Assembly: GCF_000143415.4 (NCBI RefSeq)
Contig: NW_003314338.1
Coordinates: 186,001-250,000 of the forward strand
Direction of reading: 5' to 3'
DNA length: 64,000 nt
Source of the DNA: Selaginella moellendorffii
Taxonomy: Eukaryota; Plantae; Lycopodiophyta
Part shown: positions 9,001-59,551 of the stretch, in pieces
How positions within the stretch are numbered: the stretch's first letter is position 1
Layout of the letters: each line of letters starts with the position of its first letter
Notes under the pieces: model-generated
What the model was told of the DNA's origin: nothing
Database searches by the model: none
The model's input: the letters and a program-made list of their open reading frames with translations, nothing else
Made by a program: the position numbers and the translations under genes

Positions 9001-12000
9001 CTTTGTATTGTCTTGCTGGAAAGTGGCTTGCACAAACAAGATCCGCAAGGTACCAACGTGCCCGAAATTATTTTGTCCATAACAAATTTTCGTTGCAGCT
9101 CTCATGTAATCCTTGAGTCTTATCTTGAGAAAGCTGTCATCATTGCTGAGACTAGATCTACGAGTTCTGGTAGTAGCGATTTCATGAAACGGAGAAGTAA
9201 AACACATTTCCACCTGGCCCATTTTGCTAATGCTCTTCATCGAAGTTATGAAGATCGACTTGGCTCTACCGAGTGGCAAACTGAATTACAGCTGAGAAAT
9301 ATGAAGGTATGATGAACTTGCAAAGACTTTTTGTCACATCATCTGTGTTCTTTAGATGAAGGAGTATGAGGCACTGGTGAGAAAAGCCAAAGAATCAAAA
9401 GTAAGCACTCTTTTATTTGGCTGTAATAACTTTTTGGTTTTTGAAAGGATGATACGCATGGTTACTCTCTTAAGGCGCTGGAAGTTCAGAAGGAGCTTAA
9501 ACTGGAAAGTGTAGAGTGGACCAAGATGCATGTGAGTTATAGCTCAATACACTTGCTCCTGCCTGACAATGATGTCTGCAGGGCGACATGGCACGTGTGC
9601 TTAGAACTTGCCTCAAGTCCTACAGGAGTTGCTTACTCTCAAGTGACAAGTATGATATGAGAGTGGTAAGCTAAACTCGTAATATTGGCCTAGTTTTAAT
9701 CTACTTCGATAGGTCTTTCGGTTGGTTTCTCTTTGGTTTGGGAACGTCGAGAACAAAACTGTTATAAATGACATGATCGAGACTGTGCATAAGGTAAGTT
9801 CAGTTGTGCTGCAAATTAGGGGGACTTCTAGTTGGCACACATCACATTGGCAGGTACCGTCGTTTAAGTTCCTTCCGCTGGTTTATCAAATAGCATCCAG
9901 AATGGGTGCCATAAAAACGGCAAACGATTTTCAGGTATGTTTTTCAGTCCTGAATCTTGAGACTGTGACTTGTCGTTTCGCAGTTTGCTGTGGCCTCACT
10001 TGTGAAGAAGATGGCGATTGAGCATCCGTACCACTCACTCTACCAGGTACTGTGCTTCTACCAAGCTATGTGCCTTCTAATGTGGATTTACAACTTTAGT
10101 TACTGGCGCTGGCCAATGGGGATCGAATCAAGGAAAACCAGAAGAGGAAAAACGCTTTCGTTATTGACCTAGAGAAAAAACGTGCAGCAGAGGAGCTACT
10201 GAAGGAGCTAACTAATCGCCATTCTAATTTGATCATGCAGGTAATTAATTATTACATCACAATTCAGGACGTGGTTCCTTTGTTATTTAGGTGCGAGATA
10301 TGGTTGAGGTGTATATCAAACTGGCCGAGCTGGAGGTCTCACAGCAAGTAATTGCCGTGTGCAGCGTTGGCCTACTTTGTAGCTAATTTTTCTTTACTTT
10401 GTTTTTTTGCAGGACTGCCTTAAGCCAGTACCCTATCCAAGGGATATTCGTAGTGTGCGACGACTTAATCTGGTAAATACTAGAAGTTATCCTTCAATAT
10501 TTCCTTCAATTGAAATTTATACAGGTCCCCGTTTTGACTGCGAACATTCCAGTAGATCGCAATTGTGACTACTCTGGTAAAAATCTCCCATATTTCGATG
10601 GATTCGAGGGAAGCATTACGTAAGATTAACTTGGTCTTGCTTTCATACTAACTAAAAGCGCAAAACATTTCAGTGTAATGAGAGGCGTTAATGTTCCAAA
10701 AGTTGTGCTGTGCCGCGGATCGGACGGCCAAAAGTATCGCCAGTTAGCCAAATCTGGGGGTGATGATCTCCGTCAAGATGCGGTCTGTAGTCTCTAAGAC
10801 CTTGGAGAGATAATAACATCGATTTTCAGGTGATGGAGCAACTTTTTGGTCTTGTCAACACACTCTTAAAGGATCATTCAGAAACTCGTATCAGATGTCT
10901 TCAAATACGAACATACAAGGTACAACTAGCAGTTTTCATATGATCCCGTTTCTTACTTTCGAAAACTCAGGTTGTTCCGTTCACTCCGAGTGCTGGTGCT
11001 CTGGAATGGGTGAATGGGACCATTCCACTCGGACAGTATTTGCTGGGAAGGTAAGAATTAGTATGAGATCTTCTGGTTTGCTCAGAGAAGGAAAATTGTT
11101 TAGTTCTAAAGTACCAGGAGCACACACTCGCTACAGCGTTGCAGATTGGACGTTTGCGGAGTGCCGAGAGCATATAGTCAAGGTATGTGTGACGCCCGGC
11201 GAGCTATCCATTGTTCACCGTTTGTTGGTTAGGAATCCAACAAAAGCGCGGCCTTCCAGACCGTGTGCAAAAACTTTAGGTGAGACTATGAGATTTATTC
11301 TGCCAGGTGGTTGTAAGTTGTGTCTGCTAGGCCTGTTTTCCGCTACTTCTTCCGAGAGAACTTCTCTCGAGCTGCAGACTGGTTTGAAAAGCGGCTGAAC
11401 TATACGCGAAGTGTGGCAGCTTCTTCAATGGTGAGAAATTTCTCATTTGTTGTGCTTGTTCTCTGCTGATCACGTCTTTAATTTCAGGTTGGCTACGTTG
11501 TGGGACTGGGAGACCGCCATTCGATGAACATTTTGATTGATCAGGCTAATGCTGATGTCGTCCATATCGATCTAGGGGTGGCGTTTGACCAAGGATTGAT
11601 GCTTAAGACACCAGAAACGGTAGCTGATTGCTTGCTGTGCCGTAGCTGACTTGGGATACCTCCAGATTCCGTTTAGACTCACACGGGACGTTATCGATGG
11701 TATGGGTGTCACGGGTGTGGAGGGAGTGTTCAGGAGATGTTGTGAAGCGACGCTTTCCGTCTTGCGAGCGAACAAGGAAGCGTTGCTCACCATTATCGAG
11801 GTAAGTGCTACGAAGTAAGGCGGAAGAAAGTTTGCTAAGGTTGCTATGCAGGTGTTCATACACGATCCTTTGTACAGATGGGCCTTGTCACCCCTCAAGG
11901 CGCTGCAGAGACAAGAGGTATACATCATCTTTATAATGCTTCTCTAATTTCCATTCAGGGAGCCGAGTATGCGGATGTGGAGGACCCTGATAAAGTGGAG

Positions 12001-12225
12001 GGAAACAAAGATGCGACACGGGCACTAATGCGCGTTAAACAAAAGCTTGATGGCTATCGTGATGGCGAGAACCGTACAGTCGAGGGTCAGGTAATAAAGG
12101 ATTGGCATTGCTCTCTTTTTCTTTCTTTAAGAACTGTCCCATTACAGGTCCAGCAGCTGGTCCAAGATGCACAAGATCCAGAGAACCTGTGCCTTTTGTT
12201 TCCTGGTTGGGCCGCTTGGCTGTGA
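37..12225 (+). CDS. ATM: ATM serine/threonine kinase (PIKK family), many short exons, 5'-partial (first exon upstream of window)
   Basis: TAN-like N-terminus ([31 protein letters not shown], ~202-336); FAT motifs ([17 protein letters not shown] 7408; [11 protein letters not shown] 8901); kinase motifs [11 protein letters not shown] (~10750) and [17 protein letters not shown] (~11503-11577); FATC end [24 protein letters not shown] at 12225; GT-AG introns of ~50 bp. Confidence 0.96.
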
Positions 12226-12297
12226 TGCTGCAAGCTTCTTTCACAGATGCAAGGTGCTGTGTTTTGAAGCTATACGAGGTTCAGCTGTTTGAGGAAA

Positions 12298-14311
12298 CTA
12301 GACAGGCAGCTTGGCGATGTATTCTGGCAGTCCCATTTGCTCCAGAGGAACGCCGAACTCGGCCAGCTTGGATTGAAAAGCTTTGACAACGCTGTTGTGG
12401 GCCTGAAGGCACAGATATGTACGACGAAAATGATCAGAGAGCGCCAGTCTGAACTGCGAATCTTTACTTTGGTGACCCTCCCGAGCTCGTAATAAAGCCG
12501 CTTGATCTTCTGGTTCTTGGTGTCTATAACCTTGTCAATTCCAAACTTGGCTCCACTGGTGGCGTCCAGGAGTTTGGATGCGCCCATGGCCTCGCCCAGC
12601 TGAGTGTCCTGCAACCACCAGGTGATGAATCAAACACAAAACTCTGCCCCGCCGCACGCGCACCTTCTTCTCCAGCTGCTCCAACAAGACTTGCACGCGC
12701 TTCTCCAGCAGCAAGCTCTTGACCCCGCATTTCTGCTGCACGTCAAAAATGCACGACTCAAACCGAGCGTACAAGTCATCGCGCTCCGCTTGGACCTGGA
12801 GACACACAGCCTTGTACTACGTGATATCGCGTCCCCAGGGATGCATGCGCATGCATGCAATACCTTTTCGAGCTTCTCCTGGAGCAGCCTGTACTCCCAT
12901 TCCAGGTTCTGGACGTGCTTGAGAGCGTCCACGTGTTGCAAACGCAACTGCTGAAGGGAGTGCTTATCCTGTATTGGTTTTACTTTGATCAGCAGGCAGT
13001 TCTGAAAGAGGAATTCGTTACCTTGTCATACTGAGCCATCTGTTTCCTCAGGTTCTCCACTTCCTTTAGAGCCCGTGTCAGTGGCTCGGTCAGCCTTCTG
13101 TTCTCCTGCGCAATCTCGTACATGAGCTTCTCGTTTGCAGCCTCCCTCTTTTTCATGTCAGTCACGTCCTCCTAAAAAGGTTACACTGGCGGCAGTGTCA
13201 GTCTGCTGCCCTACTCCAATGGAACTTGTTTGTGTCACCTTGAGCGTCTTGATAAGGTCGAGATTGTTCTGGGTGATGTCGTTGTAATAGCACTTGATCT
13301 CCGAGAATGCCTTCTCGTGCTTCTTCATGAGGTCCGTGATGTGCATGTTTTTACGCTCCTCAATCTCGTGTATCTCCTGCTTCCGCTGGAACTCGTCATT
13401 GTCTCTGGTTTGTTTGATCTGTGCGTGTCACGCCATTGGAGAAAGCAGCAAAGTTTGAGCCATTGAGCAACTAAACCTTCTTGTCAGTCTTGGCAATCAG
13501 ATCTTGGGCATCCAGGTCAAACTGTTGCCTCATCTTTGTTATCTCCTTGGCATGGTCCTGCCAGAAACGATATCATGAGCCAGGGATACAGACATGGCAT
13601 ACGAGCTTCATCTGCTTGATCGTGTCCTCATAGTTGAGCTCCATTTCTTTCTTGTTGTCCTTGAGTGTACGCAGATCATTCCTGCAGCGCACAGCTGCAT
13701 CAGCAGGAGGGACAAGGTGTTTATCAGTACATATCATGACATGATCCAAGCAGAGCCACGTACAAGAGTTGAGATTCACGCTGGGCTGCCTGCTGGCGCT
13801 GCAGCTTGAGAGCCACCTCGTTCTCGGCCTTGACGCTGCCCACAATGTTCTGCTGCTCATATAAGAGGTGCTTCATCCGCTGGTTGTACACCTGCATGCA
13901 CGCGCACGAGTTTGCAGTCGACTAAAGGCAAATGCTCACCTTGATCTCCGCCTGCTGCCTCTCCTGGAGCTGCTCCCGCTCGACGTCTTTGTTCCGCACC
14001 AGTGCCAGAGCATGCTCGTGCTCCTTCTTCTTGATGTCCCAGAAGGACGCCACCTTGTCCTGCGCGGCCAGGCCACGAGCACGTTGAACGTTTCAAATGA
14101 GCTGCTCGGGGCCAGGAACACTCACCCGATCAATCTGCATGCGGTTGCGCTCATTTTCTTCCTTGGCCTTGTCCGCAGTAAGCGTTGCCACCTGCGCCTT
14201 GAGCTGCTCGGGTGTTGGCCCCGACGGCCCAGCGCCATCCTTGGACTTCTTCCCTCCCTTGCCTTTGCCACCCTTCTTCTTCTTGCCATCCCCCTTCTTC
14301 TTGGGTCCCAT
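12298..14311 (-). CDS. GAS8: GAS8/DRC4 (trypanin), nexin-dynein regulatory complex subunit, multi-exon
   Basis: [16 protein letters not shown] start; [30 protein letters not shown]; [26 protein letters not shown]; last exon [24 protein letters not shown] with TAG at 12298-12300. Confidence 0.92.
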
Positions 14312-14401
14312 TTCCACTCACTCTCTCTGCCACAAACTACTAACCGTGAACCGGTTTTAATATTCCCTTCAAGTGTTATAGAGCGAGTTATAATAGAATC
14401 T

Positions 14402-16122
14402 TTACATGCGCGTGTCTGCTCGGAAGTTGAACCATCTCTTCTTGCTCGACTTGTCGTGCCCATCCTCCGCCGCCGCTGCTGCCGCTGCTTGCTCCTCGTC
14501 CTCTGCCTTCTTGGCTGTGCCAAAAGAATCTTGGATCGACTCCCTCAGCTTCAATAGCTCGTCAACCTTGATCAATCAGCCGCGTCAGTCAAGCCCACAC
14601 AGCCCAGTAAAAATATGCCAACTTACAGCCACTTTCTCCTCGGAATACTTCTTCGTCACTGCAGCAAAACGGGCAAGCACCTGGGGAGAGAGTGAGAGAG
14701 CGAGAGGAGAAACCGGATTAATTACCTCGCGGTACTCGGTTTCAAACTGCTTCAGTTCCGCACGCTTGGCTAGTATTTGTCCCTCGACGTCTCTCAGCCT
14801 CTCGGCACTCTTTTGGCAGGCGTCCACGCAGCACGCCTCAATGGTATATGACGCGGCCTTGAAAAAATTGTCACCTAGATCGAGAGAGCATTGCCGTCAC
14901 CCACAAGAGCAAAGCTAAAGGCATACCATAGACGGCAAAAATGTGTGTTCCAGGTTTCAGCTCCGACATCTCACAAGGCTGGAGTCCCTCGAGCTTTTTA
15001 AAGAACGCAGCATCCGGATCTTTTGCCATAGCTAGCTGCGAGGAGGAAGAGGGACGAGTTTAGTGCAATGCCAAAACCGTGCCTGCTTAACACACCGCGT
15101 TGACTGCCGGATCAAGGCGATACACTTGGAAGTGGAGGAAGTAAAGCCCTGCGGATGTCACCTTTCCAGTTTTGATGCTGTCCTCCTACAACCGAACAGG
15201 CACGCAACTGCAGTCAATGCTTATGCTGGAGGGCCACGCCGTCAGGCTCACCTGGATTGCCAGACCCAAGCCTCCATTCTCCTCCTGCTCAAAGTAGAGT
15301 AGCTGGCCAGAACAAGAACGAGAGCCGGGTGGTGGAGACTAGAGATGGAATTAAGCTTGCCTTGAATTTGCTCTGGGCAACAGACGTAGCCCGCACCACG
15401 ACCCCAGCGGCTGCTTGGTCCGGCGAGATTGTTACGCCGTAGAAATGCGCCCCTTGCTTCTCCACCTGCTTTCACGGTACAAGCCCGGGATGAGGCACAG
15501 GCGGTCGAACAGCGAGACAAACCTTGTCGTTGAAAGGCCGGCCGAGAGGCAAAGGCCTGATCGTCACGGTCCCATTCAACGCGTCCTCTAAAACTTGAGC
15601 GGAGATGGTAGTCTTGATCGGCACGCCCAGCTTGCTGAAGAAACCAGATGCATAAAAGAGGGAACGGGTGTCTTGCTTGCTATCCTCACCTGAACAATGC
15701 AACGAACATGGTGTTGACTGTCCCCAGGTTGGAGAGGTCCAGCTCCATATCCAGGCCATCGAGATCAACTGCCTACGAGGGAGACGAGATCAAAACGGCA
15801 GACGAGCGTAGCGCGTTACGGACCTGGAACCCTCCGATGTCGTAGCTCCTCCGCTTCTCGGGATCGCCCAGAATTCCATACGCATACGCAACCTCCTTGA
15901 ACAAATCGGGTGCCTGGGGATTGTTGGCATTCTTGTCGGGATGGTATCTGCGTTGGGGGGGATCTCGCTCGATCTCGAAGAAGTAGACCAGAAAGGAGAG
16001 TACCTGAGGGCCAGCTTCCGGTACGCACTCTTGATCTGCTGCGCCGTTGCATCGCGGGGGACGCCCAGCACCTCGTACGGGTCCCTGTGCACCGGGGAAG
16101 CCACCGGCCTGACGTCGCCCAT
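14402..16122 (-). CDS. DnaJ protein, ARG1/ARL (chaperone dnaJ 15/16-type), multi-exon
   Basis: J-domain RDPYEVLGV..IKSAYRKLAL|YHPDKN; MFVALFSKLGVPIKTTISAQVLEDALNG; AKDPDAAFFKKLEGLQPCEM; ILAKRAELKQFETEYRE; C-terminus KKRWFNFRADTRM*. Confidence 0.9.
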
Positions 16123-16210
16123 GGCTTTCTACGAGGAGGCGGAGGAGGTCATCCTGTTACCTAAGAAAGGGGGGAGGGGGGCATATGCCAAATAAAATCG
16201 GGGCGTGGTG

Positions 16211-16219
16211 TTAGGGTTT
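16211..16219 (-). promoter_or_regulatory. telo-box (AAACCCTAA) in the 108-bp divergent DnaJ/DTC spacer
   Basis: ttagggttt on + equals AAACCCTAA on -, 11 bp before the DTC ATG; a known plant promoter/5'UTR element. Confidence 0.55.
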
Positions 16220-16230
16220 AGGGGCGAACA

Positions 16231-17444
16231 ATGGCAGCGGCGGTGGACATGGCGGTGCAGAAGAAGCCCCAGTCGGCGGTGTGGACGACCGTGAAGCCGT
16301 TTGTGAATGGGGGCCTGGCCGGCATGGGTGCCACTTGCGTTATCCAGCCCATTGACATGATCAAGGTAGCCCGGATCTGGATGGATCCATGGATCAACCC
16401 GCGTCTTTGTCCTTGTCGCAGGTCAGAATTCAGCTGGGCGACGGCAGTGCGATGCAGGTTGCCAAGAGCTTGTATGCCCGGGAGGGGCTGGGTGCGTTTT
16501 ACAAGGTATGGAGTCTTGGCCATGCAGCAAACAATGCAAACGATGGTCTTTTCCTTTTTGCCTTTTATCTTGCAGGGCCTGTCGGCGGGCTTGCTGCGGC
16601 AGGCGACATACACGACGGCGCGGCTGGGATCCTTCAGGTGAGGCTCAGTTCGTTGCTGCACTTGGTGTCTCATGCGTGATCGATCCCGCAGAGTGCTGAC
16701 GAACAAGGCCACCGCCGCCAACGACGGCAAGCCCCTGCCGCTCTACCAAAAGGCCTTTTGCGGGTTGACGGCGGGCGCCATTGGTGCGTGCGTCGGGAGC
16801 CCCGCAGACTTGGCCCTCATACGGATGCAGGCGGACTCCACCCTGCCGGAAGCGCAGCGGCGCCACTACAAGAACGCGTTCCACGCGCTGACGCGGATTG
16901 GCAAAGACGAGGGCGTGCTGGCGCTGTGGAAGGGAGCCGGACCCACGGTTGTGAGGGCCATGGCGCTCAACATGGGAATGCTGGCATCTTACGACCAGAG
17001 CGTCGAAGTGTTCAAGGCGTTCCACTTCTCCGAGATTCCCACAGTGATAGGTTGGTGCTCCAGCCAGCCACCACCACCACCACCACCTTTTTTCTAACAC
17101 CTGCTTTTGCTTCCGCAGGCGCGAGTGCAGTGTCGGGTTTCTTTGCTTCTGCATGCAGCCTACCCTTCGACTACGTTAAGACGCAAATACAAAAGATGCA
17201 GCCGGGGCCTGATGGCAAGTACCCCTTCTCGGGCTCTTTGGATTGCGCCGTCCAGACGTTCAAAAAGCACGGGCCTCTCAAGTTTTACACGGGCTTTGGA
17301 ACGTATTGCGTGAGGATCGCGCCCCATGTCATGGTAGGCATATGCTATTTATTCTCCCTCTCACTCATTCACTGGCGACCATTGCAGATGACATGGATAT
17401 TCCTCAACCAGATACAAAAGTTAGAGACTCGCGTGGGCCTGTGA
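16231..17444 (+). CDS. DTC: mitochondrial dicarboxylate/tricarboxylate carrier (SLC25 family)
   Basis: VWTTVKPFVNGGLAGMGATCVIQPIDMIKV; GLLRQATYTTARLGSF; PADLALIRMQAD; PFDYVKTQIQKM; RIAPHVMMTWIFLNQIQK. Confidence 0.95.
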
Positions 17445-17684
17445 TTCTTTTCTTTCGTTTTTTGGTACAAGTTCGCAATTCCTGACAACGAATGCAAGGC
17501 AACACCGCGGGTGCAGAGGGGATTTACCATAAGTCTGTAGTTGTTCCCAGGACGAATTTTATCTTGATTTTAGAAGGAATAAGACTTCGATTAATATGAC
17601 ATGACATGGCAGCTTGCTTGTCCACGCGCCAAGCTGGCGATGTGGGGAAACGCGCTATGCGTCGATTGACTCCGGGCGGGAGGA

Positions 17685-19936
17685 ATGGTGCTTGTAGCGG
17701 TGGAGGAGATGGGCGACGACTGCAACACGCTCGTATCAAGCCCAAGCCCGAGTCGAGACGTGGCACCCGCGCTCGAGCTTAACTTCCCTTCCTGCCACCC
17801 GCTCGTGGCGGCACACTACCACCTGCACATACCTGCAGTGCCACTGTTTGAGCACGGTAATCTTGTCCACGGCATGATTGCAATTTGCAATACCTGTGCA
17901 TGCAGCCGAGCAAGTCATCGCCACACGATACCGGTTGGCGACGCAACAGCAGCACCGTAGCAGCATGGACGTGGGCACGCAGATTGCATCCTACGCGGAT
18001 CAAGTCAAGGAGATGAAAGGGAGGATCAACTGGCTGCAGGAAAGCTTGCGGCGGTCGTCGGGAGCGGCTGCCCAGGAGCACGCGGAAGACCTGGGTAAAT
18101 TCTTTGCCGTCCAGTCCGTCAAGGTTGAAGAGCTAGGCCAGCAGATAGATGTCTTTTCTGAGGAGTTGCGGCAGTGGGAGGAGGCCGAAAATCCCACCGA
18201 TGACAATCGCTTGTCCTCGTTGGCTCGCACAGTGATCCAGGAGGCTACCAGGGACAGGGCTGCCGGCCAAACGGTGAGGATCCAGCTGTCGGATCTAGTC
18301 CAGCAGCGGGAGCAGCGACGGGATCAGAGCCCGTGCCTGAGCATTAGCAGGAATGACTTGGAGATGAAGCGCAAGGCAATGGGGGCGAGGGTGGCCAGGG
18401 CTGCCAAGCACGAGGCCAAGCGCAGGAAGGTGCAAGAGGTGAAGCTCCCTTTCAAGGTTGGTATTCCCGCCGCCACGAGGCCTCAGGGTGGCCTTCGCAC
18501 GGGTCAGCTGAGGAAGAGCAACAAGAGCATCCTGAATGGCACGGCGGCTGGCGTGCAGGGCTGCATCAACAGCCTGCAAAGGGAGGTTCTGCGGCTCAAG
18601 GAAATTGTCGAGGACAGGGACCAGCAACTGTGTGCAGAGCAGCGCTGGAGATACGACTTGGAGAAGAGGCATGCTGTCGAGGTAAGGGCGTTTCTCATGG
18701 AAGCCGAGGATAGGACACGGCAGTTCAAGTTTGAACAGGCCCTTGCGGAGAACAAGATCTCCAACCTGTTAGCTAAGCTAGAGCGGCCAAGGGTGGTGGA
18801 GGTGGAACATGCACAAGAGCAGCACAAAGCCGCTCTTGATGCTGATAACAACATTGAGGTTGTGGTGGAACAGCCCGATGATGCCAAGGGCGTTGACGAT
18901 CCTGATGCAGTGGTGGAGGCTGTCCAAGAGGATGACGAGGTCCCCGTTGCTAGTACGCAAGACCAGACGGATACGGATAATGTCAACCGCCAGGTCCCGG
19001 TAAATAGCGGGCCTGTCGCGTGTAGCAGCCGATTCTACGGAAGGGAGATCGCCATCAACGGCACCCAGCTCAGGCAAGCACTCAAGCTCAAGAGCATTGC
19101 CGAGGCCAAGGCTGAGAACCTCAAGAGGCAAGTTAATGCTCTCAAGAAGCTCGCCGGGGAGCTGCAACACGAACAGCAGCAGCACAGCCGACACAGGAGA
19201 GAGAGCGGGAGCAGCGACGTGGACAGATTGCAGGCCCAGCTGCTGCAGTTGAAGAAGCAGCTGGCTGACAAGACGAGGGAGCTCGAGGCTGAGCAAAGTA
19301 AGCGAAGCGATGAAGCTGGAGAGAGGGCGGCGGCAGTGGCGAGGCTGGAAATCGAGGTTGGTAGTTGCCTTCCCCCAATGTCACAATGCACTTACAAGTG
19401 TACGTTGTAGGTTGTGTTGCACAAGAACCTGGCCATGGAGAGAGCTTCCGAGTTGAAGGCTGAAAAAAAGCAGCGGTGCAAAGTTGAGAGCCAGTTAAAG
19501 GATATCCGGTGTCAAATGGAAGATCACGCTAAACAGGATCATCGCCGGCAGCAGAGCTACGATGCCATCTCGCACAAGCAAAACCGACGGCTTCAGCTCA
19601 GCCTCAAGAAGTCAAGGCACAAGTATGAGCAGCTGCATGACTTCTGGAGAAAGGAGCAAGGGTGTAGGCTGTCGTCGGACAGTCAGTGCCACAGGCTCCA
19701 CGTCTTGTGCTCCACTACGGCCGAGAGGCTGGAAGAGCTAAAAGATTTATTGGCGGAGCTCGAGGCTCAACAGCGTCCGAGAGAACAAGCCAAGTGGCAC
19801 GCATGTAGTCACCACGACATGCCCGACTTACGTTTCAGCCGACTGGACGGCCCAGGCACCATGGGAGAGGATTCCAAGCTTGAGACGTCAGAGAAGCTGC
19901 TCTTTTTGCTGGACAAGCTTGCAAAAGGACTGGATG

Positions 19937-19971
<35 letters not shown>

Positions 19972-21192
19972 GGCGGCGGCGAGAGCGCTGGCGAGCGCGA
20001 AGCGTTGGTGTCTGGAATGAGGAAGAAAGTGAGCGACTTGGCGAGGTTGCTGAGGGACGAATTGCAGGACAGGGATAGCGGTGACGAAGCGGAGCAGCGG
20101 GAGCAGCAGCAAGGCCCGACGGCGGAGCAGCAGGTGGCGCAGCTGGGGCGGGTGTGTGAGTTGCAGGGCAAGAAGTTGCGAGCGGCGGAGGGGAGGGTGG
20201 CGGTGCTCAAGAAGCACGTGTCACGGCTCAGGCGAGTGGCGGACGAGACTAGCAAAGAGCTGGAGCACGAGAGGTCGTGGAATCAGCCGCAGCAACAGAG
20301 CAGCAGGAACAACAGCAGCAGCAGCCTCGCCCGGATCAAGCTGCTAGAGATACAGCTGCTCGAGTACAAGCGGCAGGCAGAGGACAAGGCCAAGGATCTC
20401 AAGCACGAGCGCAGCCTGAGGTTCGACCTCGAGAGCCGCAGCGCCACCCACATCCAGCACCTCGTGCAACAACTCGACGAGCATGATGTCGAGCGCCAGG
20501 ACGTGTGCGTCCAGGTGCAAGAAGAAGATCCGGTTGAGGCCATGCACGTCTTTGTGCTGGAGCTGCTGGTCGGGGAGAAGTCCGAGGCTCTGGCGCACGA
20601 GAGGCGGGAGAGAGGCGAGGCCGAGGCCAGGAACAGGGAGCTGGCTACGCTGCTGAGCTACGCGCAGGTGGAGATTGCAAATGCCAACCAACGGGACGAT
20701 GAGCTGTGTCAGGTGTCGGCCTGCCAGGGGCACAAGGTGGTGGAGCTGACGGCGTTACTGGAGCGCTTTGCCAAGAGGCTGGACGAGTGTGAGGACGATA
20801 AGGGCGTGTCTTGTGTGCCGAGTGTGAGACAGAGCGACCCGGATGATGCCGGTATGTCAACGTCAACCTGGAATAGTGGTGCTAGTGATGAATGTGTCAA
20901 GTTGACGGCATCCATGTTGACACTGGAGGAGGCCAAGGGGGGGATGCTGGTAATGGAACAGGAGCAACACCCACATGCTGCAGCCACCAAGCTTAGGAGC
21001 TGTGAAGATTTCATTGCCAATCTTAAGAAACAGGTCAAAGACCTCGAGCTGTCGGAGGAGGTGCTGCGCTACCGTGACAAGGTTTGGCGGCGAGGCTTGC
21101 TGGCCTTCGATCAAGTCCTCTTGCTCTGTTTCGGCGCTCTGTTTGCATTCAACAGGATCACCATTTTGTTGAGAGACAAAGTTCCCACATAG
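17685..21192 (+). CDS. ~1,134-aa coiled-coil protein with C-terminal hydrophobic segment and -VPT end (candidate plant KASH protein); 3 exons
   Basis: Exons 17685-17856, 17906-19356 and 19411-21192 join in frame across 49- and 54-bp GT-AG introns; heptad-rich E/Q/K/L composition; ends ..VLLLCFGALFAFNRITILLRDKVPT*. Start could alternatively be the ATG at 17965. Confidence 0.8.
19942..19968 (+). repeat. (CAG)9 polyglutamine microsatellite in CDS
   Basis: cagcagcag.. encoding DDEQQQQQQQQQH. Confidence 0.95.
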
Positions 21193-21271
21193 AAAACAAA
21201 AGACATTGTTTCTTGCAAAGCCTTGTCGTTGACAAAAACTTAACTCATTCCAAAACTTGGCACACCTAGAG

Positions 21272-22270
21272 TCACAGCTCTCCACAATCGACAATGACGC
21301 ATGCCTTTTTGGGGCGGTCGTCGCGGTCCGTGGGCTGGGTTTCGATCATCTTGACCACGTCCATGCCTTCGAGAACATGACCAAAAACGACGTGCTTCTT
21401 GTCCAGCCAGTCCGTCTGCGCAGCTCGCTTTTCAGTCAAATACAGATGGAACAAGAGCACCAGATAGTCACCTTGACAGTGCAGAGGAAGAACTGGCTCC
21501 CGTTGGTATTGGGCCCGGCGTTAGCCATGCTCAGAACTCCTGGCCCAGTGTGTGTCACTGTAAGCAAAAGAGCAAGCGTGAGTCGAGAGGTACACAGCTT
21601 CAGTACTTACGCTTGAAATTCTCGTCTTCAAACTTCCCACCATAGATGCTCCGTCCACCAGTCCCCTGCAAACAAACAAGCTCTTGCCTTAACAACCAGC
21701 AACGTAGATCTCCTCCTTACATCACATCTATCGAAATCTCCGCCTTGGATCATAAAGTTCTTAATCACCCTGTGGAAAGCAGAGCCCTTGTAGCCATACC
21801 CCTTGTCACCTGAAACAAAGAGAGCGGTCAAGAACAGAAGAGAAGCCGCCTCGATCTCTTGTCACCTGCGCACAAGGCTCGGAAGTTCTCCACGGTCCTG
21901 GGGACGTCGTCCCCGTACAAACCAATCACGATGCGACCCACCGGCTCGTTGCCGATCTTCATGTCAAAGTAGCACTTCCTGGTGACTTTAGCTTGTAGCG
22001 TCGACGGCTCCACGCTCTGCCAAGACACAAATCGTTACACAAGCTCTCCATGGCCGGCATTCTAAGACTTACAACAGCGGCCTGGGTTGCAAAAGAGCGG
22101 CTCCGGCTCATCACGGCAGCTGGCGAGGGTGAAGCTCTCATCGCCTTGGGCAGCAGCTGGTGCGACGGCGACACAAAGGAGGAGGAGCGCAGCCATGCCA
22201 AGGTGGGCCGAGAGGCGGCCGCGGCCATACCGGGCATGGATGCACACAATTTGCCCCTCGCCGCCGCCAT
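21272..22270 (-). CDS. CYP20-2: plastid cyclophilin-type peptidyl-prolyl isomerase (CYP20-2-like)
   Basis: Ala/Ser/Arg-rich transit peptide; [34 protein letters not shown]; [15 protein letters not shown]; [15 protein letters not shown]; [29 protein letters not shown]. Confidence 0.88.
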
Positions 22271-22386
22271 GCTCGACTGTTTGGCCGCTTGATTGATAAA
22301 CCTAGGTAGGCACACAAAATATCTCAGGGTCCGCAAGTATTATTAATGCCCAAGATATTATTTTCACGGCGCCAACCCTTTGCGTT

Positions 22387-25300
22387 TTACACGACAAGCG
22401 CTCGTTCGCTACGCGGGTACAGCCCGATCTACACACACATTTACAGTAAGTCACACAGACAAGCCGGACGAAGAAACCTTGACCTGGCTCACAAGCATAT
22501 CAATCTGTTCTCTGTACATTTGCTTCACGTCCGCAAGATCCGCTCGAAGCTCCTCCACCTGCGACCACGGCATATTCAAGACAGCGAGGAGATCAAACCG
22601 GTGGACACCAACCTGCTCGTCCCTTTCCCCCATGAGCTCCAAGGCAGAAGCATGCCTCCGCCGTAACGCCTCCAACTCGGCACGCAGACCACGCAAAGTT
22701 GACGCTTCACTCCGTAGCTTCTCGCACTGTCAGAGCACAACGTTGACTGGGAAATGCCAAGACCGAGCTTGTGCCTACCTCACTCGTGCTTCTCACAAGC
22801 TCTTCGGCCAGCGCAGCTCGAGTTGATTCCAGCTCCGCCTGTAACATTAGATAGCAAACAGATTGATGCCTCGCTGCTTACCAGGCGAGTCGCGTACGAC
22901 GACAACTCCCCCTCCTTGTGCCGCATCACCGACTCAAACTGCTCCGCCGATACATTGCCTTTGCTCACAGGAGGTGGCGAAGGAGGCGGCGGCTCCACCA
23001 CCATGGCCTTGTAAGAGTCTAGCGACGCCTGCAAGAAGTGACCCTCCTCCATGCCATTGACGCTCGTCAAGCTAGGCAAGCGCCACTGTTGTGTACCTGA
23101 AGCTGCCGCCCGACTGTTTATCTTGTCGTCGGCAACCCGCTGCACCCGCTCCTCCGCCTCTCCGCGCATTTCTCGCTCTCTGCTGAGCTCCTGCACTCAC
23201 AGAGCGGATGTCAAAAGGACGAGATACGCCAACTACGTGCCTGCTCCAGTGCTAGCCTTCGGGACCTCTCCTGGCCAAGGACTTGTGCATACTTCTCCTT
23301 GACATCACTCAATTCCTCATGCAAAACTTTGGCTCGCCCTTCGTGTGATGCAGCCGACTCCAGTGCAGCTAACAACTCCTGCCGGGTCTCAGATGCTCTT
23401 GCCCGCTCCGCTTCAAGCGAGCGCGTCACTTGAGACAGCTCGGCCTTGACACACGACACCTGCGTTGCCTCAAGGTACTTGAGTTGCCGCAACTACACCA
23501 AAGGAGATTAACACTACCTGAGCTTCCATGACCGCCAGCCGTGACAGCGTCTGTGACAAGCGCTCGTTTGTAGCTCTCTCCCGTTCCGTTGCAGCTGCTG
23601 CCTTTGCGTCAGCCTCCTGCATGTATTGTGAGTGAACAACTTCATCATCAGGCACACACACACGCGCCACACCTGCAAGCGAGAGTTGAGAGCTCGTTCT
23701 GCACCACTCCAAGCTTCCGCCCTCATAGCCGATGACTCCTGTTGAGCAGAGAGCAGGCAGTTTGAGAACATGGACAGCGGCTATATATATGGAGAGAGAC
23801 GGCTCACTCACCTGCATTGCCTCTATTTGACGGAGCAAAGGCCTCGTGGACTCGGGAACCCGGGCAACAAGATCATCATACCGCGTTTCTGCATCCTGTA
23901 CATACACCCCTGACGCACGTATGCAAGTGCTCCCTCGCCAAAGCTTTCAGACAAACCTGGCAGCGCCTCTCGAGGCTTTCAATGTCTTTCCTCAGCACAT
24001 CCTCCCGGTACGCTGCCTATACAATGAGCCAGCTATAAGTTGTAACGTAGATGGAGCACATCATGTCCCGGAGCCTCACCACTTGTTCTGCTCGACTTAG
24101 GCCCTGACGGAGCTCCTCGAGCGATTGCACAAGAGCGCTCTCCCTCTGAGCAGCCTGATGCAGCCGCTGGTCCAGGTCCGCTTTTGCCTGGCTGCTCGCA
24201 CGAGATTCCGCGCGTGCCTCACTTTCCCTTGCTTCGTTCACCATCTTGGTATAGAATTCCCTCTGGGCTGCGAGATCCGCATGCCCCTTGTCAAGCGTCT
24301 CCTGCAGGGCTTTCTCCGTGGCGGCTTTATCTTTCCTCATGCTCTCTACTTTGGCTTCTTCAACCTGTCCAGTAGCAGGGTGAGAAACGAAAAGAGAGAA
24401 CAACAGGCGTACCTGTAGCTTGGAATGGAGCCGCTGCTTCTCTTCTTCCAGCTCCCGAACCTGTAAAGCCCGCCATCACCATCTCAAACGTTTAACACAC
24501 CAGCACACTCTGATGTTTCACCTGGGACCGTAACTTCCGGATTGCAGCCTCCTGAGAAGCTTGCTTCTTTGAGAGCTCTTCACCTGACAAACAGCAGCGG
24601 GTGTTAGGAGAGGAGAGGGGGGGCACTGGTTACCTTCGGCCATGACCTGTTTAATGATATCGTCCTTCTCCTTGAGCAGGGCCGTGGAGTCGGACTTTCG
24701 ATTCACTTCTCTACGCAGCATGTCACGTTCCTTGGTCAGGGCGTACACCTGCTCGCGCATTGCCAAATGAGTGAAGAGAGCGTCTAAATCTAAACGAGAG
24801 AGAGAGAGAGAGAGGGTGTGCTGACTTTGCGCTCGGCAGCGCCTAGCTCCTGCTTGAGCGCCTCCAGTTCCACTTGGCTGCTTCGTTTCTGTGACAAAGG
24901 AGCGGCGTGAGTGCAAGGACGAAGCAGTGAGATACTCTCACCTTGCTGGCCTCCTCCAGGGAGCGCCTGAGCTGCTCCTTCTCCTCAATGAGCCGTGAGA
25001 TCTGGTGGGCCTCGTCGAGCACCTACACACAGCCGAGTATAACTGGTGCACCACACACACCGAGTCCGCATACCTCCTCCTCATGAGTTAACTGGGCCTC
25101 ACTGCTGGGTTGCTTGTCGTCCTCCTCCACCGCCGCCGTCGCCGCCACCGCCGCCGCTGCATCCTGCGTCTGGACGATCTCACTCTCACCTGGGTCCAGC
25201 GCGTCATTGGTCCGTGGCGATCTGGGCAGCTCCGGATCTGGGGCTGGAGCAGGCAGCGTCACCTCCTCTGCTTTGTTGCTGCCAGCGCTACCTTCCAATC

Positions 25301-25397
25301 CCAGTGCCGAGTCGAAATTCCTTTCGATGGTCTTGACGCCCTCGCTGATTTTGGTGACTGCCCCAGCAATGTCGCTGCTCAGGTTCCACCACGCCAT
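22387..25397 (-). CDS. GC5: golgin candidate 5 / TMF1 (TATA modulatory factor) homologue, multi-exon
   Basis: DIAGAVTKISEGVKTIERNFDSALG; LKEKDDIIKQVMAEG; VPESTRPLLRQIEAMQ; TMF C-terminus ALELMGERDEQVEELRADLADVKQMYREQIDMLVSQ. Stop at 22451 (unspliced) or 22387 (after one more intron). Confidence 0.92.
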
Positions 25398-25499: not shown

Positions 25500-27098
25500 A
25501 TGCCCGCGCAAGATCCTCACAGGGACGATGCTGATCCGCTCACCAAGCTCATCCTTCGGGCTCAAGCTTTCCGTGACAAGCTCGCCGAGTCCTCCAGCCG
25601 GCATCGCGAGTCCGTTAAGTCGATCGAGAGGTCTTCCCAGAAGGATGCAAGCTTGGAGGTGGACCTTATTCTTGCTGGCGCTGGTGCGGGCGATGATAAT
25701 TCTCGACTACTCGGTCTCGGGAATGACGACGAAAAAGAAGCTGAGGAGGAGGCAGCTCTTTTGCAGGAGCTCTTCTTTTCTAGAGAATCAACAACAACGA
25801 CAGCAACAACAAGGTCGACGACGGGGACGACTGAGATAGATCCCCGAAACGATGGACTGTGCTTGCTCGTGACAATTGGAAAGGTGGTGCTCTTGGACGA
25901 GACAGTGGAAGACCTGACCAAGATCAAGCCAAGCATCCTGTGCCACTTTGGCAGCACAATTTCAATGCTATCATCTTGTACGTGCCTCCTGACGCTCTTC
26001 TTCCCTGCTGTGTTTGACGCCCAGGGTCTCAAGCTTTGCCCAGAGCAGCGAATTTCAGTCACCCCGGTCACAGTCCAAAAGAGAATGCTACTCTTTGACT
26101 ACAGGTCGCAGCTGTTTTGGAAACTGGCATCCACGAGAGTTCAACAGGAGTGGTGTGCTCAACCCGTCAAGACAACTCTTTACCTCAGGTGGCAATCCGG
26201 TGAAGCATTAGAGTGTTACGGCTATGTGTCCTTGAACAACGCCATACAAGTGGGAGGTTTGCAGACTAGCTTGGTACTAGCTGCTGGCAAAAGCATAAAA
26301 GATGATGTGCATCCTGCTGTAATCAAGCCAACGCGGTACAAGACCAAAGCTAGTTCCGTCGAGCCTGTGACGAGCCTTAGAAGTTCCAAGAGCAACATCG
26401 ACTTGGAAGGAAGAGCCATTGCAACTGTCGACATTGGGATGGTGCTCGTCGGTGAATCAAGCGTAGGTGCTGCTCCGAAGAAGACGAGTTGCTACATCCA
26501 CGCAGGGGATGAACAGGTCAGCCATCTCAGGTCTGGTTTGGGTGAGCTCATTTCCTTTTGCTTTGCTCAGGAACCTTGGATTTATCTTAACTTGCACAAC
26601 TTGGGGGCGGAGTTTACCAGAGTGCAATCCGCAAGATCCCAAACCATGCTCTTGGTTGTCAAGTCAGGTTGTAGAGTTGCTTTCGCGAGTATCAGGTTGT
26701 CACGGAAGAACAGGTACCGCCAGAAGTTTTTGGATGCTGTATTGCAACCGAGCCCAAGCGAGGAATGCCTGATATTCTTGGAAGCATGGGACAGCTTGCG
26801 AGCGTATGAGGGGCTGGGAGAGGGTGGACTGGAGGGCTTGCTCGGAATGCTCAAGGTCCCATACTCTTTGGGCTCATGGACGGAACGAACTTCAAGACAC
26901 GGGATTGTCAAGTTTTCAGGCTGCTTCAGAGTTTGGCATCCGAGCAAGAAGTCAGTGTCTGGCAAGGTCACAGTGATTGTTGTGCTTGGCTTGAGATACC
27001 AAGTCTTGAAGATCCAGAAAGAGAACCAGGCAGCGGCTGTGATCCAGTCTTGTTTTCGAAAGTTCCTATTTGAAAAGTCACAGCTCAAAGAAAATTGA
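25500..27098 (+). CDS. C2-domain/IQ-motif protein resembling centriolar C2CD3
   Basis: 532-codon ORF (probable in-frame 54-bp intron 26517-26570); beta-strand-rich C2-like blocks; IQ motif AAAVIQSCFRKFL; motifs LIFLEAWD..LLGMLKVP and GKVTVIVVLGLRYQVLKIQK recall C2CD3. Confidence 0.65.
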   Translation: MPAQDPHRDDADPLTKLILRAQAFRDKLAESSSRHRESVKSIERSSQKDASLEVDLILAGAGAGDDNSRLLGLGNDDEKEAEEEAALLQELFFSRESTTTTATTRSTTGTTEIDPRNDGLCLLVTIGKVVLLDETVEDLTKIKPSILCHFGSTISMLSSCTCLLTLFFPAVFDAQGLKLCPEQRISVTPVTVQKRMLLFDYRSQLFWKLASTRVQQEWCAQPVKTTLYLRWQSGEALECYGYVSLNNAIQVGGLQTSLVLAAGKSIKDDVHPAVIKPTRYKTKASSVEPVTSLRSSKSNIDLEGRAIATVDIGMVLVGESSVGAAPKKTSCYIHAGDEQVSHLRSGLGELISFCFAQEPWIYLNLHNLGAEFTRVQSARSQTMLLVVKSGCRVAFASIRLSRKNRYRQKFLDAVLQPSPSEECLIFLEAWDSLRAYEGLGEGGLEGLLGMLKVPYSLGSWTERTSRHGIVKFSGCFRVWHPSKKSVSGKVTVIVVLGLRYQVLKIQKENQAAAVIQSCFRKFLFEKSQLKEN

Positions 27099-48012: not shown

Positions 48013-48019
48013 CTCCCAA

Positions 48020-59505: not shown

Positions 59506-59551
59506 CTGAGAGGGTGAAAGCCCAAAGCGTTCGTCTCCCAGACCCTGGGGG

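What the first reader, a model, noticed from the sequence alone, without database searches (positions are those of the whole stretch)
17685..21192. Candidate giant, nesprin-like plant KASH protein (long coiled coil + TM + terminal VPT)
Seen: three exons splice in frame to ~1,134 aa of mostly coiled coil, ending in a hydrophobic stretch (GLLAFDQVLLLCFGALFAF), a 13-aa tail and C-terminal KVPT*. Established: plant KASH proteins (WIP, SINE) are defined by a C-terminal TM, a short luminal tail and a terminal x-VPT that binds SUN proteins. I do not recognise WIP or SINE/ARM homology, and the protein is much longer than those families. Inference: a lineage-specific LINC outer-membrane tether, possibly linking the nucleus to the spermatid cytoskeleton. 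Caveat: Lys at -4 is outside the usual consensus, and the TM contains D and Q.
Basis: partly seen in the sequence, partly recalled or inferred. Interest (0 to 1): 0.85.

Follow-up and report, generated by a model that had tools for sequence, protein, structure and literature searches.

The report
Candidate Selaginella tail-anchored KASH-like protein
This is a real Selaginella moellendorffii gene for a long, mostly helical protein with no detectable relatives, whose membrane-anchor-plus-VPT end looks like the tag plant cells use to tie the nucleus to the cytoskeleton, but that role is untested.

Summary
The window is Selaginella moellendorffii scaffold GL377642.1 (not human). Exons 17685-17856, 17906-19356 and 19411-21192 splice in frame to 1,134 aa. 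The protein ends in one hydrophobic segment, a short tail and KVPT-stop. RefSeq's model on the second haplotype (XP_024519601.1, auto-named "caldesmon") has the same three-exon structure. The two haplotypes differ by 60 substitutions and three in-frame indels, with dN/dS 0.30, so the gene is constrained. The last 78 residues are identical.

No Pfam domain, no solved-structure match and no homologue outside this species were found. This includes an exhaustive HMMER search of exon 3 against 1.84 billion representative proteins.

The C-terminus meets the published working definition of a plant KASH domain in three respects: a transmembrane segment, a short tail and a terminal (V/I)PT. Three points count against it:
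- Lys at -4 lies outside the refined pattern [DTVAMPLIFY][VAPIL]PT.
- The transmembrane boundaries are ambiguous, so the tail is either 13 or 6 aa.
- Conservation in orthologues could not be tested.

"Giant, nesprin-like" and "spermatid" have no support. "Mostly coiled coil" is only partly supported.

Verdict: a plausible, previously unflagged, lineage-restricted KASH candidate (about 45%). The main rival is a tail-anchored coiled-coil protein on another membrane. Interest is moderate.

The parts
17685..17856 (+). Exon 1 (CDS start MVLVAVEE..., 57 codons plus 1 nt)
   Evidence: This is the first ATG after a stop in its frame. The donor is ACG|GTAATC. GenBank EFJ11954.1 and RefSeq XP_024519601.1 use the same start. 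All 3 haplotype differences are synonymous in this frame.
17857..17905 (+). Intron 1 (49 nt, GT..AG)
   Evidence: This is the only donor/acceptor pair with a strong GTAA donor that keeps the frame. It has 3 substitutions in 49 nt between haplotypes, against 1.6% in exons.
17906..19356 (+). Exon 2 (residues 58-541): helical or coiled-coil segments and acidic linkers predicted non-helical
   Evidence: Translation. No Pfam family reached its curated cutoff. AF2 helices at 78-152, 271-348 and 436-541. Heptad segments at 74-111, 261-306 and 483-526.
18418..18429 (+). Basic patch KRRK (residues 229-232), resembling a nuclear localisation signal
   Evidence: Motif scan. AtWIP1 also combines an NLS, a coiled coil, a TMD and a VPT tail (PMC3265956). 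The function here is not tested.
19357..19410 (+). Intron 2 (54 nt, GTTGGT...TTGTAG, contains an in-frame TAG)
   Evidence: It has 3 substitutions in 54 nt between haplotypes, and all three would be nonsynonymous if read through. GenBank models use the same donor with acceptors at 19536 or 19551. RefSeq P0005 reads through it.
19411..21192 (+). Exon 3 (residues 542-1134 plus the TAG stop at 21190-21192)
   Evidence: Translation. All public models (P0001-P0004) end identically in KVPT. The convergent cyclophilin gene ends at 21272, so there is no room for a further exon.
19942..19968 (+). Q9 tract (residues 719-727); Q5 in the other haplotype
   Evidence: GenBank model P0001 removes this region as a 159-nt 'intron', but P0002 and P0004 keep it.
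21094..21150 (+). Hydrophobic segment, reading A (residues 1103-1121, GLLAFDQVLLLCFGALFAF); leaves a 13-aa tail
   Evidence: KD 2.02. Eisenberg <H> 0.71 and muH 0.15. The Hessa-type sum for the near-identical window 1104-1121 is +1.9.
21115..21171 (+). Hydrophobic segment, reading B (residues 1110-1128, VLLLCFGALFAFNRITILL); leaves a 6-aa tail
   Evidence: This is the highest KD window (2.18) and the lowest Hessa-type sum (+0.2). The AF2 C-terminal helix runs to residue 1127 in my numbering, leaving LRDKVPT as coil.
21151..21189 (+). C-terminal tail NRITILLRDKVPT (residues 1122-1134); K at -4 is 21178-21180 and VPT is 21181-21189
   Evidence: The tail is identical in both haplotypes. The last 78 codons have 0 nonsynonymous and 2 synonymous differences.
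17606..17759 (+). Alternative first exon used by RefSeq model P0005 (ATG at 17606, donor GAC|GTGGCA, same acceptor at 17905)
   Evidence: The reconstruction reproduces P0005 exactly. Both haplotype differences inside it are nonsynonymous in that frame, so it is the less likely coding exon.

Best explanation
The locus is a genuine, selectively maintained protein-coding gene of Selaginella moellendorffii. Its GenBank entry is SELMODRAFT_425751, and the allele on the second haplotype is SELMODRAFT_428564 / XP_024519601.1. It encodes a protein of about 1,134 aa with no signal peptide and a long cytoplasmic region of helices predicted at low confidence, some of them coiled-coil-prone, joined by non-helical linkers. 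A single moderately hydrophobic segment lies 6-13 residues from the C-terminus. This is the layout of a tail-anchored membrane protein with its N-terminus in the cytosol.

The tail ends in the (V/I)PT 'SUN-interacting tail' motif. The most likely mechanism (inferred, not shown) runs as follows:
1. The protein is inserted post-translationally into the ER and outer nuclear membrane.
2. Its short luminal tail is captured by the SUN-domain trimer of the inner-membrane SUN proteins, which concentrates it at the nuclear envelope.
3. The coiled-coil rod dimerises and reaches into the cytoplasm as an adaptor for cytoskeletal or motor partners.

On this reading it is a lineage-restricted plant KASH protein, closest in architecture to WIP (NLS-like patch, coiled coil, TMD, x-VPT) but unrelated in sequence.

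Shown here: the gene structure, the constraint, the single C-terminal hydrophobic segment, the KVPT end, and the lack of detectable homologues. Inferred: membrane insertion, topology, nuclear-envelope targeting, SUN binding and any cytoskeletal role.
For: Gene and constraint:
- The 3-exon model gives an intact 1,134-aa ORF.
- RefSeq uses the identical structure on haplotype 2.
- dN 0.011, dS 0.037 and dN/dS 0.30, with p = 1.2e-5. All three indels are in frame.

Tail-anchor layout:
- There is a unique C-terminal hydrophobic segment (KD 2.0-2.2, low hydrophobic moment) and no other candidate TMD.

KASH signature:
- The terminal VPT matches the (V/I)PT motif shared by the plant KASH domains aligned from three species. 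A 13-aa tail equals the SINE-type length (PMC13200780).
- The working definition is TMD + 9-40 aa + XXPT. In the Arabidopsis proteome it returned five protein models, four of which were accepted as KASH candidates (PMC4050730).
- The terminal VPT makes the modelled pocket contacts with SUN.
- The -4 position is already very variable in the known pattern (D, T, V, A, M, P, L, I, F, Y).
- The C-terminal 78 residues are identical between haplotypes.

Context:
- Lineage-restricted KASH families are the rule (SINE3-5, the grass-specific MLKG genes, Kms1/2).
- Only SINE1/2 are known from Selaginella, and moss KASH partners of SUN2 are still unidentified.
- The refined DORY pattern excludes K at -4, which would explain why earlier searches of the NCBI nr database did not report this protein.
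Against: There are no localisation, interaction or expression data.
- Lys at -4 is outside [DTVAMPLIFY][VAPIL]PT.
- The TMD is only marginally hydrophobic. It must contain either D/Q or N/R.
- The most hydrophobic register leaves a 6-aa tail, shorter than the 9-aa minimum of known plant KASH domains.
- The tail is basic (net +2). It lacks both the acidic patch plus aromatic residue of SINE tails and the leading prolines of WIP tails.
- The published extra criterion, conservation of TMD + KASH across a family, cannot be applied. No orthologue was found, and two haplotypes 1.7% apart carry little information.
- RefSeq splits this haplotype's gene in two.
Confidence: 0.45

Rival explanations
1. 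This is a tail-anchored coiled-coil protein of another membrane: ER, Golgi, or the mitochondrial, plastid or peroxisomal outer membrane. It would act like a golgin or an organelle tether or division factor. The terminal VPT is a coincidence and does not bind SUN.
For: The TMD is only moderately hydrophobic and is flanked by basic residues on both sides (KVWRR before it; N-R...R-D-K after it, net +2). From general knowledge of tail-anchored protein sorting, these features are common in organelle outer-membrane tail-anchored proteins. The best hydrophobic register leaves only 6 luminal residues. K at -4 is outside the KASH pattern. Long coiled-coil tail-anchored proteins are a common class.
Against: A C-terminal VPT is rare by chance. 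My estimate from amino-acid frequencies is about 1.6e-4 per protein, so well under one tail-anchored protein per proteome (inference). In Arabidopsis nearly all proteins with this signature were accepted as KASH candidates. No golgin, CASP, TMF, NET or FPP family matched at Pfam. The tail is fully conserved between haplotypes, although that test is weak.
Confidence: 0.35
2. This is a soluble or peripheral coiled-coil protein. The C-terminal hydrophobic helix would be a protein-protein interface or an in-plane membrane anchor rather than a membrane-spanning segment.
For: The crude insertion energy is around or above zero (+0.2 to +1.9), with D, Q, N and R inside any 19-residue window. The AF2 model simply continues a helix through the region, at low confidence.
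Against: KD is above 2.0 over 19 residues, above the classical 1.6 threshold. The hydrophobic moment is low (0.15-0.24), so the segment is not amphipathic. The 12-residue core VLLLCFGALFAF is purely apolar. The segment sits at the extreme C-terminus, as in tail-anchored proteins.
Confidence: 0.1
3. This is a nuclear-envelope coiled-coil protein that is not a KASH protein. It could be a WIT-like outer-membrane or NEAP-like inner-membrane tail-anchored protein that associates with the LINC complex through its cytoplasmic or nucleoplasmic part.
For: WIT and NEAP proteins are coiled-coil proteins with a C-terminal TMD at the plant nuclear envelope. The protein has an NLS-like KRRK patch.
Against: No sequence similarity to any WIT or NEAP was detected. 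According to the literature those families are not found in Selaginella. WITs lack the VPT motif. From general knowledge, an extraluminal domain of about 125 kDa is too large for inner-membrane access through the pore.
Confidence: 0.05
4. On this haplotype the locus is two separate genes, or a decaying gene. The 1,134-aa protein is then an annotation construct, and any C-terminal product is the 585-aa exon-3 protein.
For: RefSeq annotates 552-aa and 585-aa models here. The four public models disagree on internal introns.
Against: Intron 2 has canonical GT..AG ends and a length typical of this gene and its neighbours. It evolves about 3.5 times faster than the exons, and all its changes would be nonsynonymous if read through. 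Both halves are under the same constraint (dN/dS 0.22-0.33). The other haplotype carries a single model. Even the 585-aa product would keep the coiled coil, TMD and KVPT.
Confidence: 0.05

Closest known systems
WIP (WPP domain-interacting proteins; AtWIP1-3, maize MLKP), plant KASH proteins
   Same: Both share the same order of parts: an N-terminal region of unknown function, a basic NLS-like patch, a coiled coil, a single C-terminal TMD and a short perinuclear tail ending in x-VPT (PMC3265956).
   Different: No detectable sequence similarity. This protein is about 2.3 times longer (1,134 aa against 489 aa for AtWIP1). The WIP tail is 9 aa, usually starts with Pro and has a hydrophobic residue at -4 (PEPDTVVPT). 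Here the tail is 6-13 aa, basic, with K at -4. WIPs are reported only from flowering plants.
SINE1/SINE2 (maize MLKS), the only plant KASH family known in Selaginella and moss
   Same: Both have a C-terminal TMD and a tail of about 13 aa ending in VPT (TVPT in AtSINE1).
   Different: There are no ARM repeats (Pfam negative). The tail lacks the acidic patch and the aromatic residue before VPT. No sequence similarity was found.
Lineage-restricted plant KASH proteins (SINE3, SINE4, SINE5, grass MLKG)
   Same: These are defined only by TMD + short tail + x-[VAPIL]PT. They have no known cytoplasmic domains and a very narrow taxonomic range.
   Different: Those proteins are described as having short cytoplasmic domains and were validated by SUN binding or family conservation. 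This one has a long coiled-coil cytoplasmic region and no validation.
Animal coiled-coil KASH proteins (KASH5/CCDC155, LRMP/Jaw1) and nesprins
   Same: As an analogy of function, these are coiled-coil or rod-like cytoplasmic adaptors anchored by a C-terminal TMD and a SUN-binding tail.
   Different: The animal tail ends in PPPX and is 8-32 aa long. Pfam finds no domain of any kind here, so none of the repeats or domains that mark nesprins (my knowledge), and no homology was found. At 1,134 aa it is small next to nesprin-1, whose last residue is L8797.
Caldesmon (the automatic RefSeq name of the allele XP_024519601.1)
   Same: Only the E/K/R/Q-rich helical composition is shared.
   Different: The Pfam Caldesmon family does not match, even at E <= 1. 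There is no PDB or library hit to caldesmon. The name should be disregarded.

Membership tests
Plant KASH protein (working definition of Zhou et al. 2014, 'DORY') | A transmembrane domain immediately N-terminal of the C-terminal tail | tested here: met
   There is a single hydrophobic segment at residues 1103-1128: KD 2.0-2.2, Eisenberg <H> 0.65-0.71 over 19 residues, and muH 0.15-0.24. No other window comes close. It was not run through Phobius or DeepTMHMM, which are not available. Hydrophobicity is marginal on the Hessa-type sum.
Plant KASH protein (working definition of Zhou et al. 2014, 'DORY') | A luminal tail of 9-40 aa (plant KASH domains are 9-16 aa) | tested here: inconclusive
   The tail is 13 aa if the TMD is 1103-1121. 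It is 6 aa if the TMD is the most hydrophobic window, 1110-1128. AF2 leaves 7 residues as coil.
Plant KASH protein (working definition of Zhou et al. 2014, 'DORY') | The protein ends in XXPT; SUN-interacting tail = (V/I)PT | tested here: met
   The end is ...RDKVPT followed by TAG at 21190-21192, identical in both haplotypes and in all four public models that include exon 3 (P0001-P0004).
Plant KASH protein (working definition of Zhou et al. 2014, 'DORY') | The last four residues fit [DTVAMPLIFY][VAPIL]PT | tested here: not met
   Position -4 is Lys (pattern). The pattern is empirical. No test of a basic residue at -4 was found in the papers read.
Plant KASH protein (working definition of Zhou et al. 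2014, 'DORY') | TMD + KASH tail conserved in most members of the protein's family | tested here: inconclusive
   The only relatives found are the alleles on the second haplotype, with identical C-termini. No orthologue appeared among 1.84 billion representatives or in the word-indexed searches. It is unknown whether other lycophyte proteomes are in those libraries.
Plant KASH protein (functional definition) | SUN-dependent and tail-dependent nuclear-envelope localisation, and binding to the SUN domain | not testable with these tools
   This needs microscopy, co-IP or FRAP, or at least multimer structure prediction. The structure tool here folds single chains only.
WIP family | Sequence homology to WIP1-3, and a 9-aa tail usually starting with Pro and ending in hydrophobic-VPT | tested here: not met
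   No hits other than the protein itself. The tail has no leading Pro, and -4 is K.
SINE1/2 family | N-terminal ARM repeats; tail with an acidic patch and an aromatic residue before (V/I)PT | tested here: not met
   Pfam finds no ARM repeat. The tail NRITILLRDKVPT is basic and has no aromatic residue.
Nesprin / animal KASH | Spectrin repeats and/or CH domains (my knowledge); tail ending in PPPX | tested here: not met
   Pfam negative. PDB sequence search negative. The terminus is KVPT (the PPPX definition is).
Caldesmon (RefSeq automatic name) | A match to the caldesmon family profile | tested here: not met
   No Pfam match at E <= 1 in any exon. No library hit.

The most novel reading that the evidence does not exclude
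Selaginella has its own long coiled-coil KASH protein, unrelated to WIP or SINE. It binds SUN through a KVPT tail, which would widen the plant SUN-interacting motif to a basic residue at -4. It would give a lycophyte a rod-like link between nucleus and cytoskeleton, of the kind still unidentified in non-seed plants.
Probability: 0.4. Interest if true: 0.55.

Novelty: new member of a known kind. Interest (0 to 1): 0.4.

Why it matters
Outside seed plants, the only known outer-membrane partners of SUN proteins are the SINE1/2 homologues. In moss, the KASH protein that links SUN2 to microtubule-organising centres is explicitly unidentified.

A validated lycophyte-specific coiled-coil KASH protein would matter in three ways:
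- It would add a new family to the plant LINC inventory.
- It would show that the search pattern used for a decade ([DTVAMPLIFY] at -4) is too narrow, prompting a re-scan of plant proteomes.
- It would offer a handle on nuclear positioning in a lineage with flagellated sperm.

If it proves to be an ordinary tail-anchored tether on another membrane, the finding is a useful false-positive example for motif-based KASH prediction. In either case the public annotation can be corrected. At present it has four to five conflicting models, one named 'caldesmon'.

Tried and rejected
- **Pfam on all three exons:** no family reached its curated cutoff. The only weak hits (MGH1-like_GH at E 0.029 and Tho2 at E 0.26) are far below cutoff and fall in the acidic linker.
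- **The search for homologous proteins, exon 3** (candidates of 326-1,038 aa): nothing.
- **Exhaustive phmmer of exon 3** against 1.84 billion representatives, any length: only the gene's own GenBank model.
- **N-terminal half searched two ways:** within the full-length context (571-1,818 aa) and alone (266-845 aa). Both returned only S. moellendorffii models of the same locus or its allele.
- **PDB sequence search with the 1,091-aa allele:** nothing at E <= 1.
- **AF2 single-sequence fold of P0001:** mean pLDDT 48 and pTM 0.28. I used it only for secondary structure and ran no Foldseek search, because matches to a low-confidence model are meaningless.
- **tblastn of the protein against the window:** no paralogue.
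- **Exact-match look-ups** for the neighbouring 532-aa ORF, P0002 and P0003: not on record.
- **Literature:** no paper in the library cites either locus tag, the UniProt ids or the RefSeq id. Poulet et al. 2017 and the Zhou 2014 supplements are not held, so the native tail of the Selaginella SINE homologue could not be compared.
- **Readings rejected:**
  - 'caldesmon' as a meaningful name;
  - the GenBank internal 'introns' at 19357-19536 and 19887-20045 as necessary, since both are in frame, free of stops after 19410, and kept by other models;
  - RefSeq's alternative ATG at 17606, because the substitution pattern argues against it.


Full report
**Source and scope.** The window is not human. 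It is Selaginella moellendorffii, scaffold GL377642.1. Locus L001 covers positions 200606-210192 of that scaffold and matches window 14606-24192 exactly.

**Checking the observation.** The sequence at 17685-21192 reads as the first-stage reader said.
- The ATG at 17685 is the first start codon after a stop in its frame.
- The only frame-preserving splice with a strong donor is ACG|GTAATC at 17856/17857 to the acceptor TGCATGCAG| at 17905, a 49-nt intron.
- A second intron, 19357-19410 (54 nt, GTTGGT...TTGTAG), removes an in-frame TAG.
- The spliced CDS is 3,405 nt, giving 1,134 aa and one terminal stop.
- The protein ends ...KVWRR GLLAFDQVLLLCFGALFAF NRITILLRDKVPT*.
- The convergent cyclophilin gene ends 79 nt downstream at 21272, which leaves no room for a further exon.

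**Public models of the locus.** Five public protein models exist for this locus and its allele, and they disagree.

| Model | Source | Length | Structure |
|---|---|---|---|
| P0001 (EFJ11954.1, SELMODRAFT_425751) | GenBank, this haplotype | 1,039 aa | Same start and end, but removes two further in-frame stretches: residues 542-583 and 701-753, the latter including the poly-Q tract |
| P0002 (EFJ08877.1, SELMODRAFT_428564) | GenBank, other haplotype | 1,091 aa | Keeps the poly-Q region and uses yet another acceptor for intron 2 |
| P0005 (LOC9642440) | RefSeq, this haplotype | 552 aa | 17606-17759 + 17906-19410: an alternative ATG, and read-through of intron 2 |
| P0003 | RefSeq, this haplotype | 585 aa | From M550 to the same KVPT end |

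Comparison with the second haplotype favours the three-exon model. That copy is L002 (GL377668.1), which has the same flanking genes: DnaJ, mitochondrial carrier, cyclophilin and TMF.
- All three differences in exon 1 are synonymous in the 17685 frame.
- The two differences inside RefSeq's alternative exon are nonsynonymous in its frame.
- All three differences in intron 2 would change the protein if it were read through.
- The introns differ at 6 of 103 positions, against 1.6% in the exons.

**Is the gene real and constrained?** The two haplotype copies differ by 60 substitutions and three indels of 24, 12 and 12 nt, all in frame. Nei-Gojobori estimates are dN 0.0109, dS 0.0365 and dN/dS 0.30. 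The excess of synonymous change is significant (Fisher p = 1.2e-5). Constraint is similar along the protein (0.22-0.43). The last 78 codons carry two synonymous and no nonsynonymous changes, a pattern consistent with constraint but too small a sample to prove it. This is a functional protein-coding gene that evolves somewhat faster than its neighbours.

**What the protein looks like.**
- *Composition.* It is rich in L, E, A, R and Q.
- *Domains.* Pfam finds nothing at its curated cutoffs, and a PDB sequence search finds nothing.
- *Secondary structure.* A single-sequence AlphaFold2 model is of low confidence (mean pLDDT 48). It predicts 62% helix in long helices of up to 87 residues, separated by stretches it leaves non-helical.
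- *Coiled coil.* A simple heptad score flags seven segments: residues 74-111, 261-306, 483-526, 550-583, 740-768, 803-830 and 1064-1098. They cover 22% of residues, against 4% in shuffles. 'Mostly coiled coil' is therefore better put as 'largely helical with several coiled-coil-prone segments'.
- *Hydrophobic segment.* There is only one, at the extreme C-terminus:
  - Kyte-Doolittle 2.18 (1110-1128) and 2.02 (1103-1121).
  - A crude Hessa-scale sum of +0.2 to +1.9 kcal/mol, against at least +11 anywhere else.
  - A low hydrophobic moment.
- *Topology.* With no N-terminal signal sequence, this is the layout of a tail-anchored protein.
- *Weak points.* The apolar core is only 12 residues (VLLLCFGALFAF), so a full span must include D/Q or N/R. 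The register is also ambiguous: the luminal tail is 13 aa (NRITILLRDKVPT) in one reading and 6 aa (RDKVPT) in the other.

**Relatives.** I searched the parts separately, as the operators advised.
- Exon 3 against the word-indexed 5.8-billion-protein collection found nothing.
- Exon 3 against 1.84 billion representatives with exhaustive HMMER, with no length limit, found only the gene's own model.
- The N-terminal half, searched in full-length context and alone, found only models of this locus and its allele.
- There is no paralogue in the window.

As far as these libraries reach, the protein is restricted to S. moellendorffii. I could not establish whether other lycophyte proteomes are in the libraries. 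Over about 400 million years a coiled-coil protein with dN/dS 0.3 would probably be unrecognisable anyway (inference).

**Comparison with the definition of plant KASH proteins.** Zhou et al. 2014 (PMC4050730) define a putative KASH domain by three criteria:
- (a) it lies immediately C-terminal of a TMD;
- (b) it is 9-40 aa long;
- (c) it ends the protein with a four-residue pattern, first XXPT and later refined to [DTVAMPLIFY][VAPIL]PT.

They add the requirement that most members of the protein's family share the feature. Schumacher et al. 2026 (PMC13200780) describe plant KASH domains as 9-13 aa ending in (V/I)PT. In their AlphaFold 3 models the VPT residues sit in the SUN pocket. SINE-type tails are about 13 aa, with an acidic patch and an aromatic residue. 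WIP-type tails are 9 aa and usually start with proline (AtWIP1: PEPDTVVPT).

Measured against this, the Selaginella protein:
- meets (a);
- meets the XXPT and (V/I)PT forms of (c);
- fails the refined pattern at -4 (Lys);
- meets (b) in only one of the two TMD registers;
- cannot be tested for family conservation;
- has a basic tail unlike either SINE or WIP tails.

In overall architecture it most resembles WIP: an NLS-like KRRK patch at 229-232, coiled coil, TMD and x-VPT. There is no sequence similarity, and it is more than twice as long.

**How specific is the signature?** In the Arabidopsis proteome the search 'TMD + 9-40 aa + XXPT' returned five protein models. Four were accepted as KASH candidates and one was set aside on the conservation criterion. 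From amino-acid frequencies I estimate about 1.6e-4 for a chance C-terminal VPT. That implies well under one tail-anchored protein per proteome ending this way by chance. This estimate is my own inference and was not measured here. The signature is therefore informative. On the other side stand the marginal TMD, the ambiguous tail length, the unprecedented Lys at -4, and the complete lack of experimental or comparative support.

**Best explanation and rivals.**

| Reading | Probability |
|---|---|
| Genuine SUN-binding outer-nuclear-membrane KASH protein | 0.45 |
| Tail-anchored coiled-coil protein of another membrane, VPT fortuitous | 0.35 |
| C-terminal helix is not membrane-spanning | 0.10 |
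| Nuclear-envelope protein that is not KASH (WIT-like or NEAP-like) | 0.05 |
| Two genes, or no single 1,134-aa product, on this haplotype | 0.05 |

- 'Giant, nesprin-like' is not justified. The protein is 1,134 aa and Pfam finds no domain in it, so none of the repeats or domains that mark nesprins. The likeness is at most a functional analogy.
- The proposed link to the spermatid cytoskeleton rests on nothing in this gene. A GAS8/DRC4-like flagellar gene lies about 3.4 kb upstream, but neighbourhood carries no such meaning in a eukaryotic genome.
- The RefSeq name 'caldesmon' is unsupported.

**Novelty and interest.** No paper in the searchable library mentions either locus tag or accession. 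The refined DORY pattern used in earlier searches excludes Lys at -4, which would explain why the protein was not reported. Lineage-restricted KASH families are the rule rather than the exception. If validated, this would be a new member of a known kind. It would also carry a useful lesson about the search pattern, and it bears on the open question of which KASH proteins serve non-seed plants. Interest is moderate (0.4).

Noticed in passing
window 17606-19410 and 19435-21192: RefSeq splits this haplotype's gene into two models. P0005 (552 aa) uses an alternative ATG at 17606 and reads through intron 2. P0003 (585 aa) runs from M550. The other haplotype carries a single 1,134-aa model auto-named 'caldesmon'. 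The two GenBank models differ again. The haplotype substitution pattern favours the three-exon model.
   Followed up: yes
window 18166-18204 (residues 145-157): LRQWEEAENPTDD is a tryptophan followed by an acidic run. It loosely resembles the W-acidic motifs that bind kinesin light chain in some animal KASH and cargo proteins (my recollection). It occurs once, and I did not check whether it differs between the haplotypes.
   Followed up: no
window 19942-19968; 18924; 19435-19446: There are three in-frame length polymorphisms between haplotypes: Q9 against Q5; a 24-nt insertion encoding QKRRQQQQ in the other haplotype after residue 397; and a 12-nt deletion (AMER) in the other haplotype. The rod tolerates indels.
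   Followed up: partly
window about 12312-14314 (-), by synteny with L002:628-2630: A GAS8/DRC4-like gene (PF13851, a component of motile flagella) lies upstream. The C-terminal end of an ATM-type kinase gene (L002:1-556, about window 11685-12240) lies to its left.
   Followed up: no
window 25500-27098 (+): A single-exon 532-aa ORF has no Pfam domain apart from a sub-threshold IQ-motif hit at its C-terminus. A 518-aa gene is called at the matching place on the other haplotype. It has no exact-match record in the gene-position index.
   Followed up: partly
window 22384-25390 (-) and 21272-22270 (-): The downstream neighbours are a TMF-type golgin (TMF_DNA_bd and TMF_TATA_bd domains) and a cyclophilin. 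They are convergent with the candidate gene, with only 79 nt between the stop codons.
   Followed up: partly
window 28001-30000 and 48001-64000: There is an AT-rich stretch (GC 0.36) at 28-30 kb. GC skew is sustained and positive (+0.22 to +0.30) from 48 kb to the end of the window. Neither was examined.
   Followed up: no
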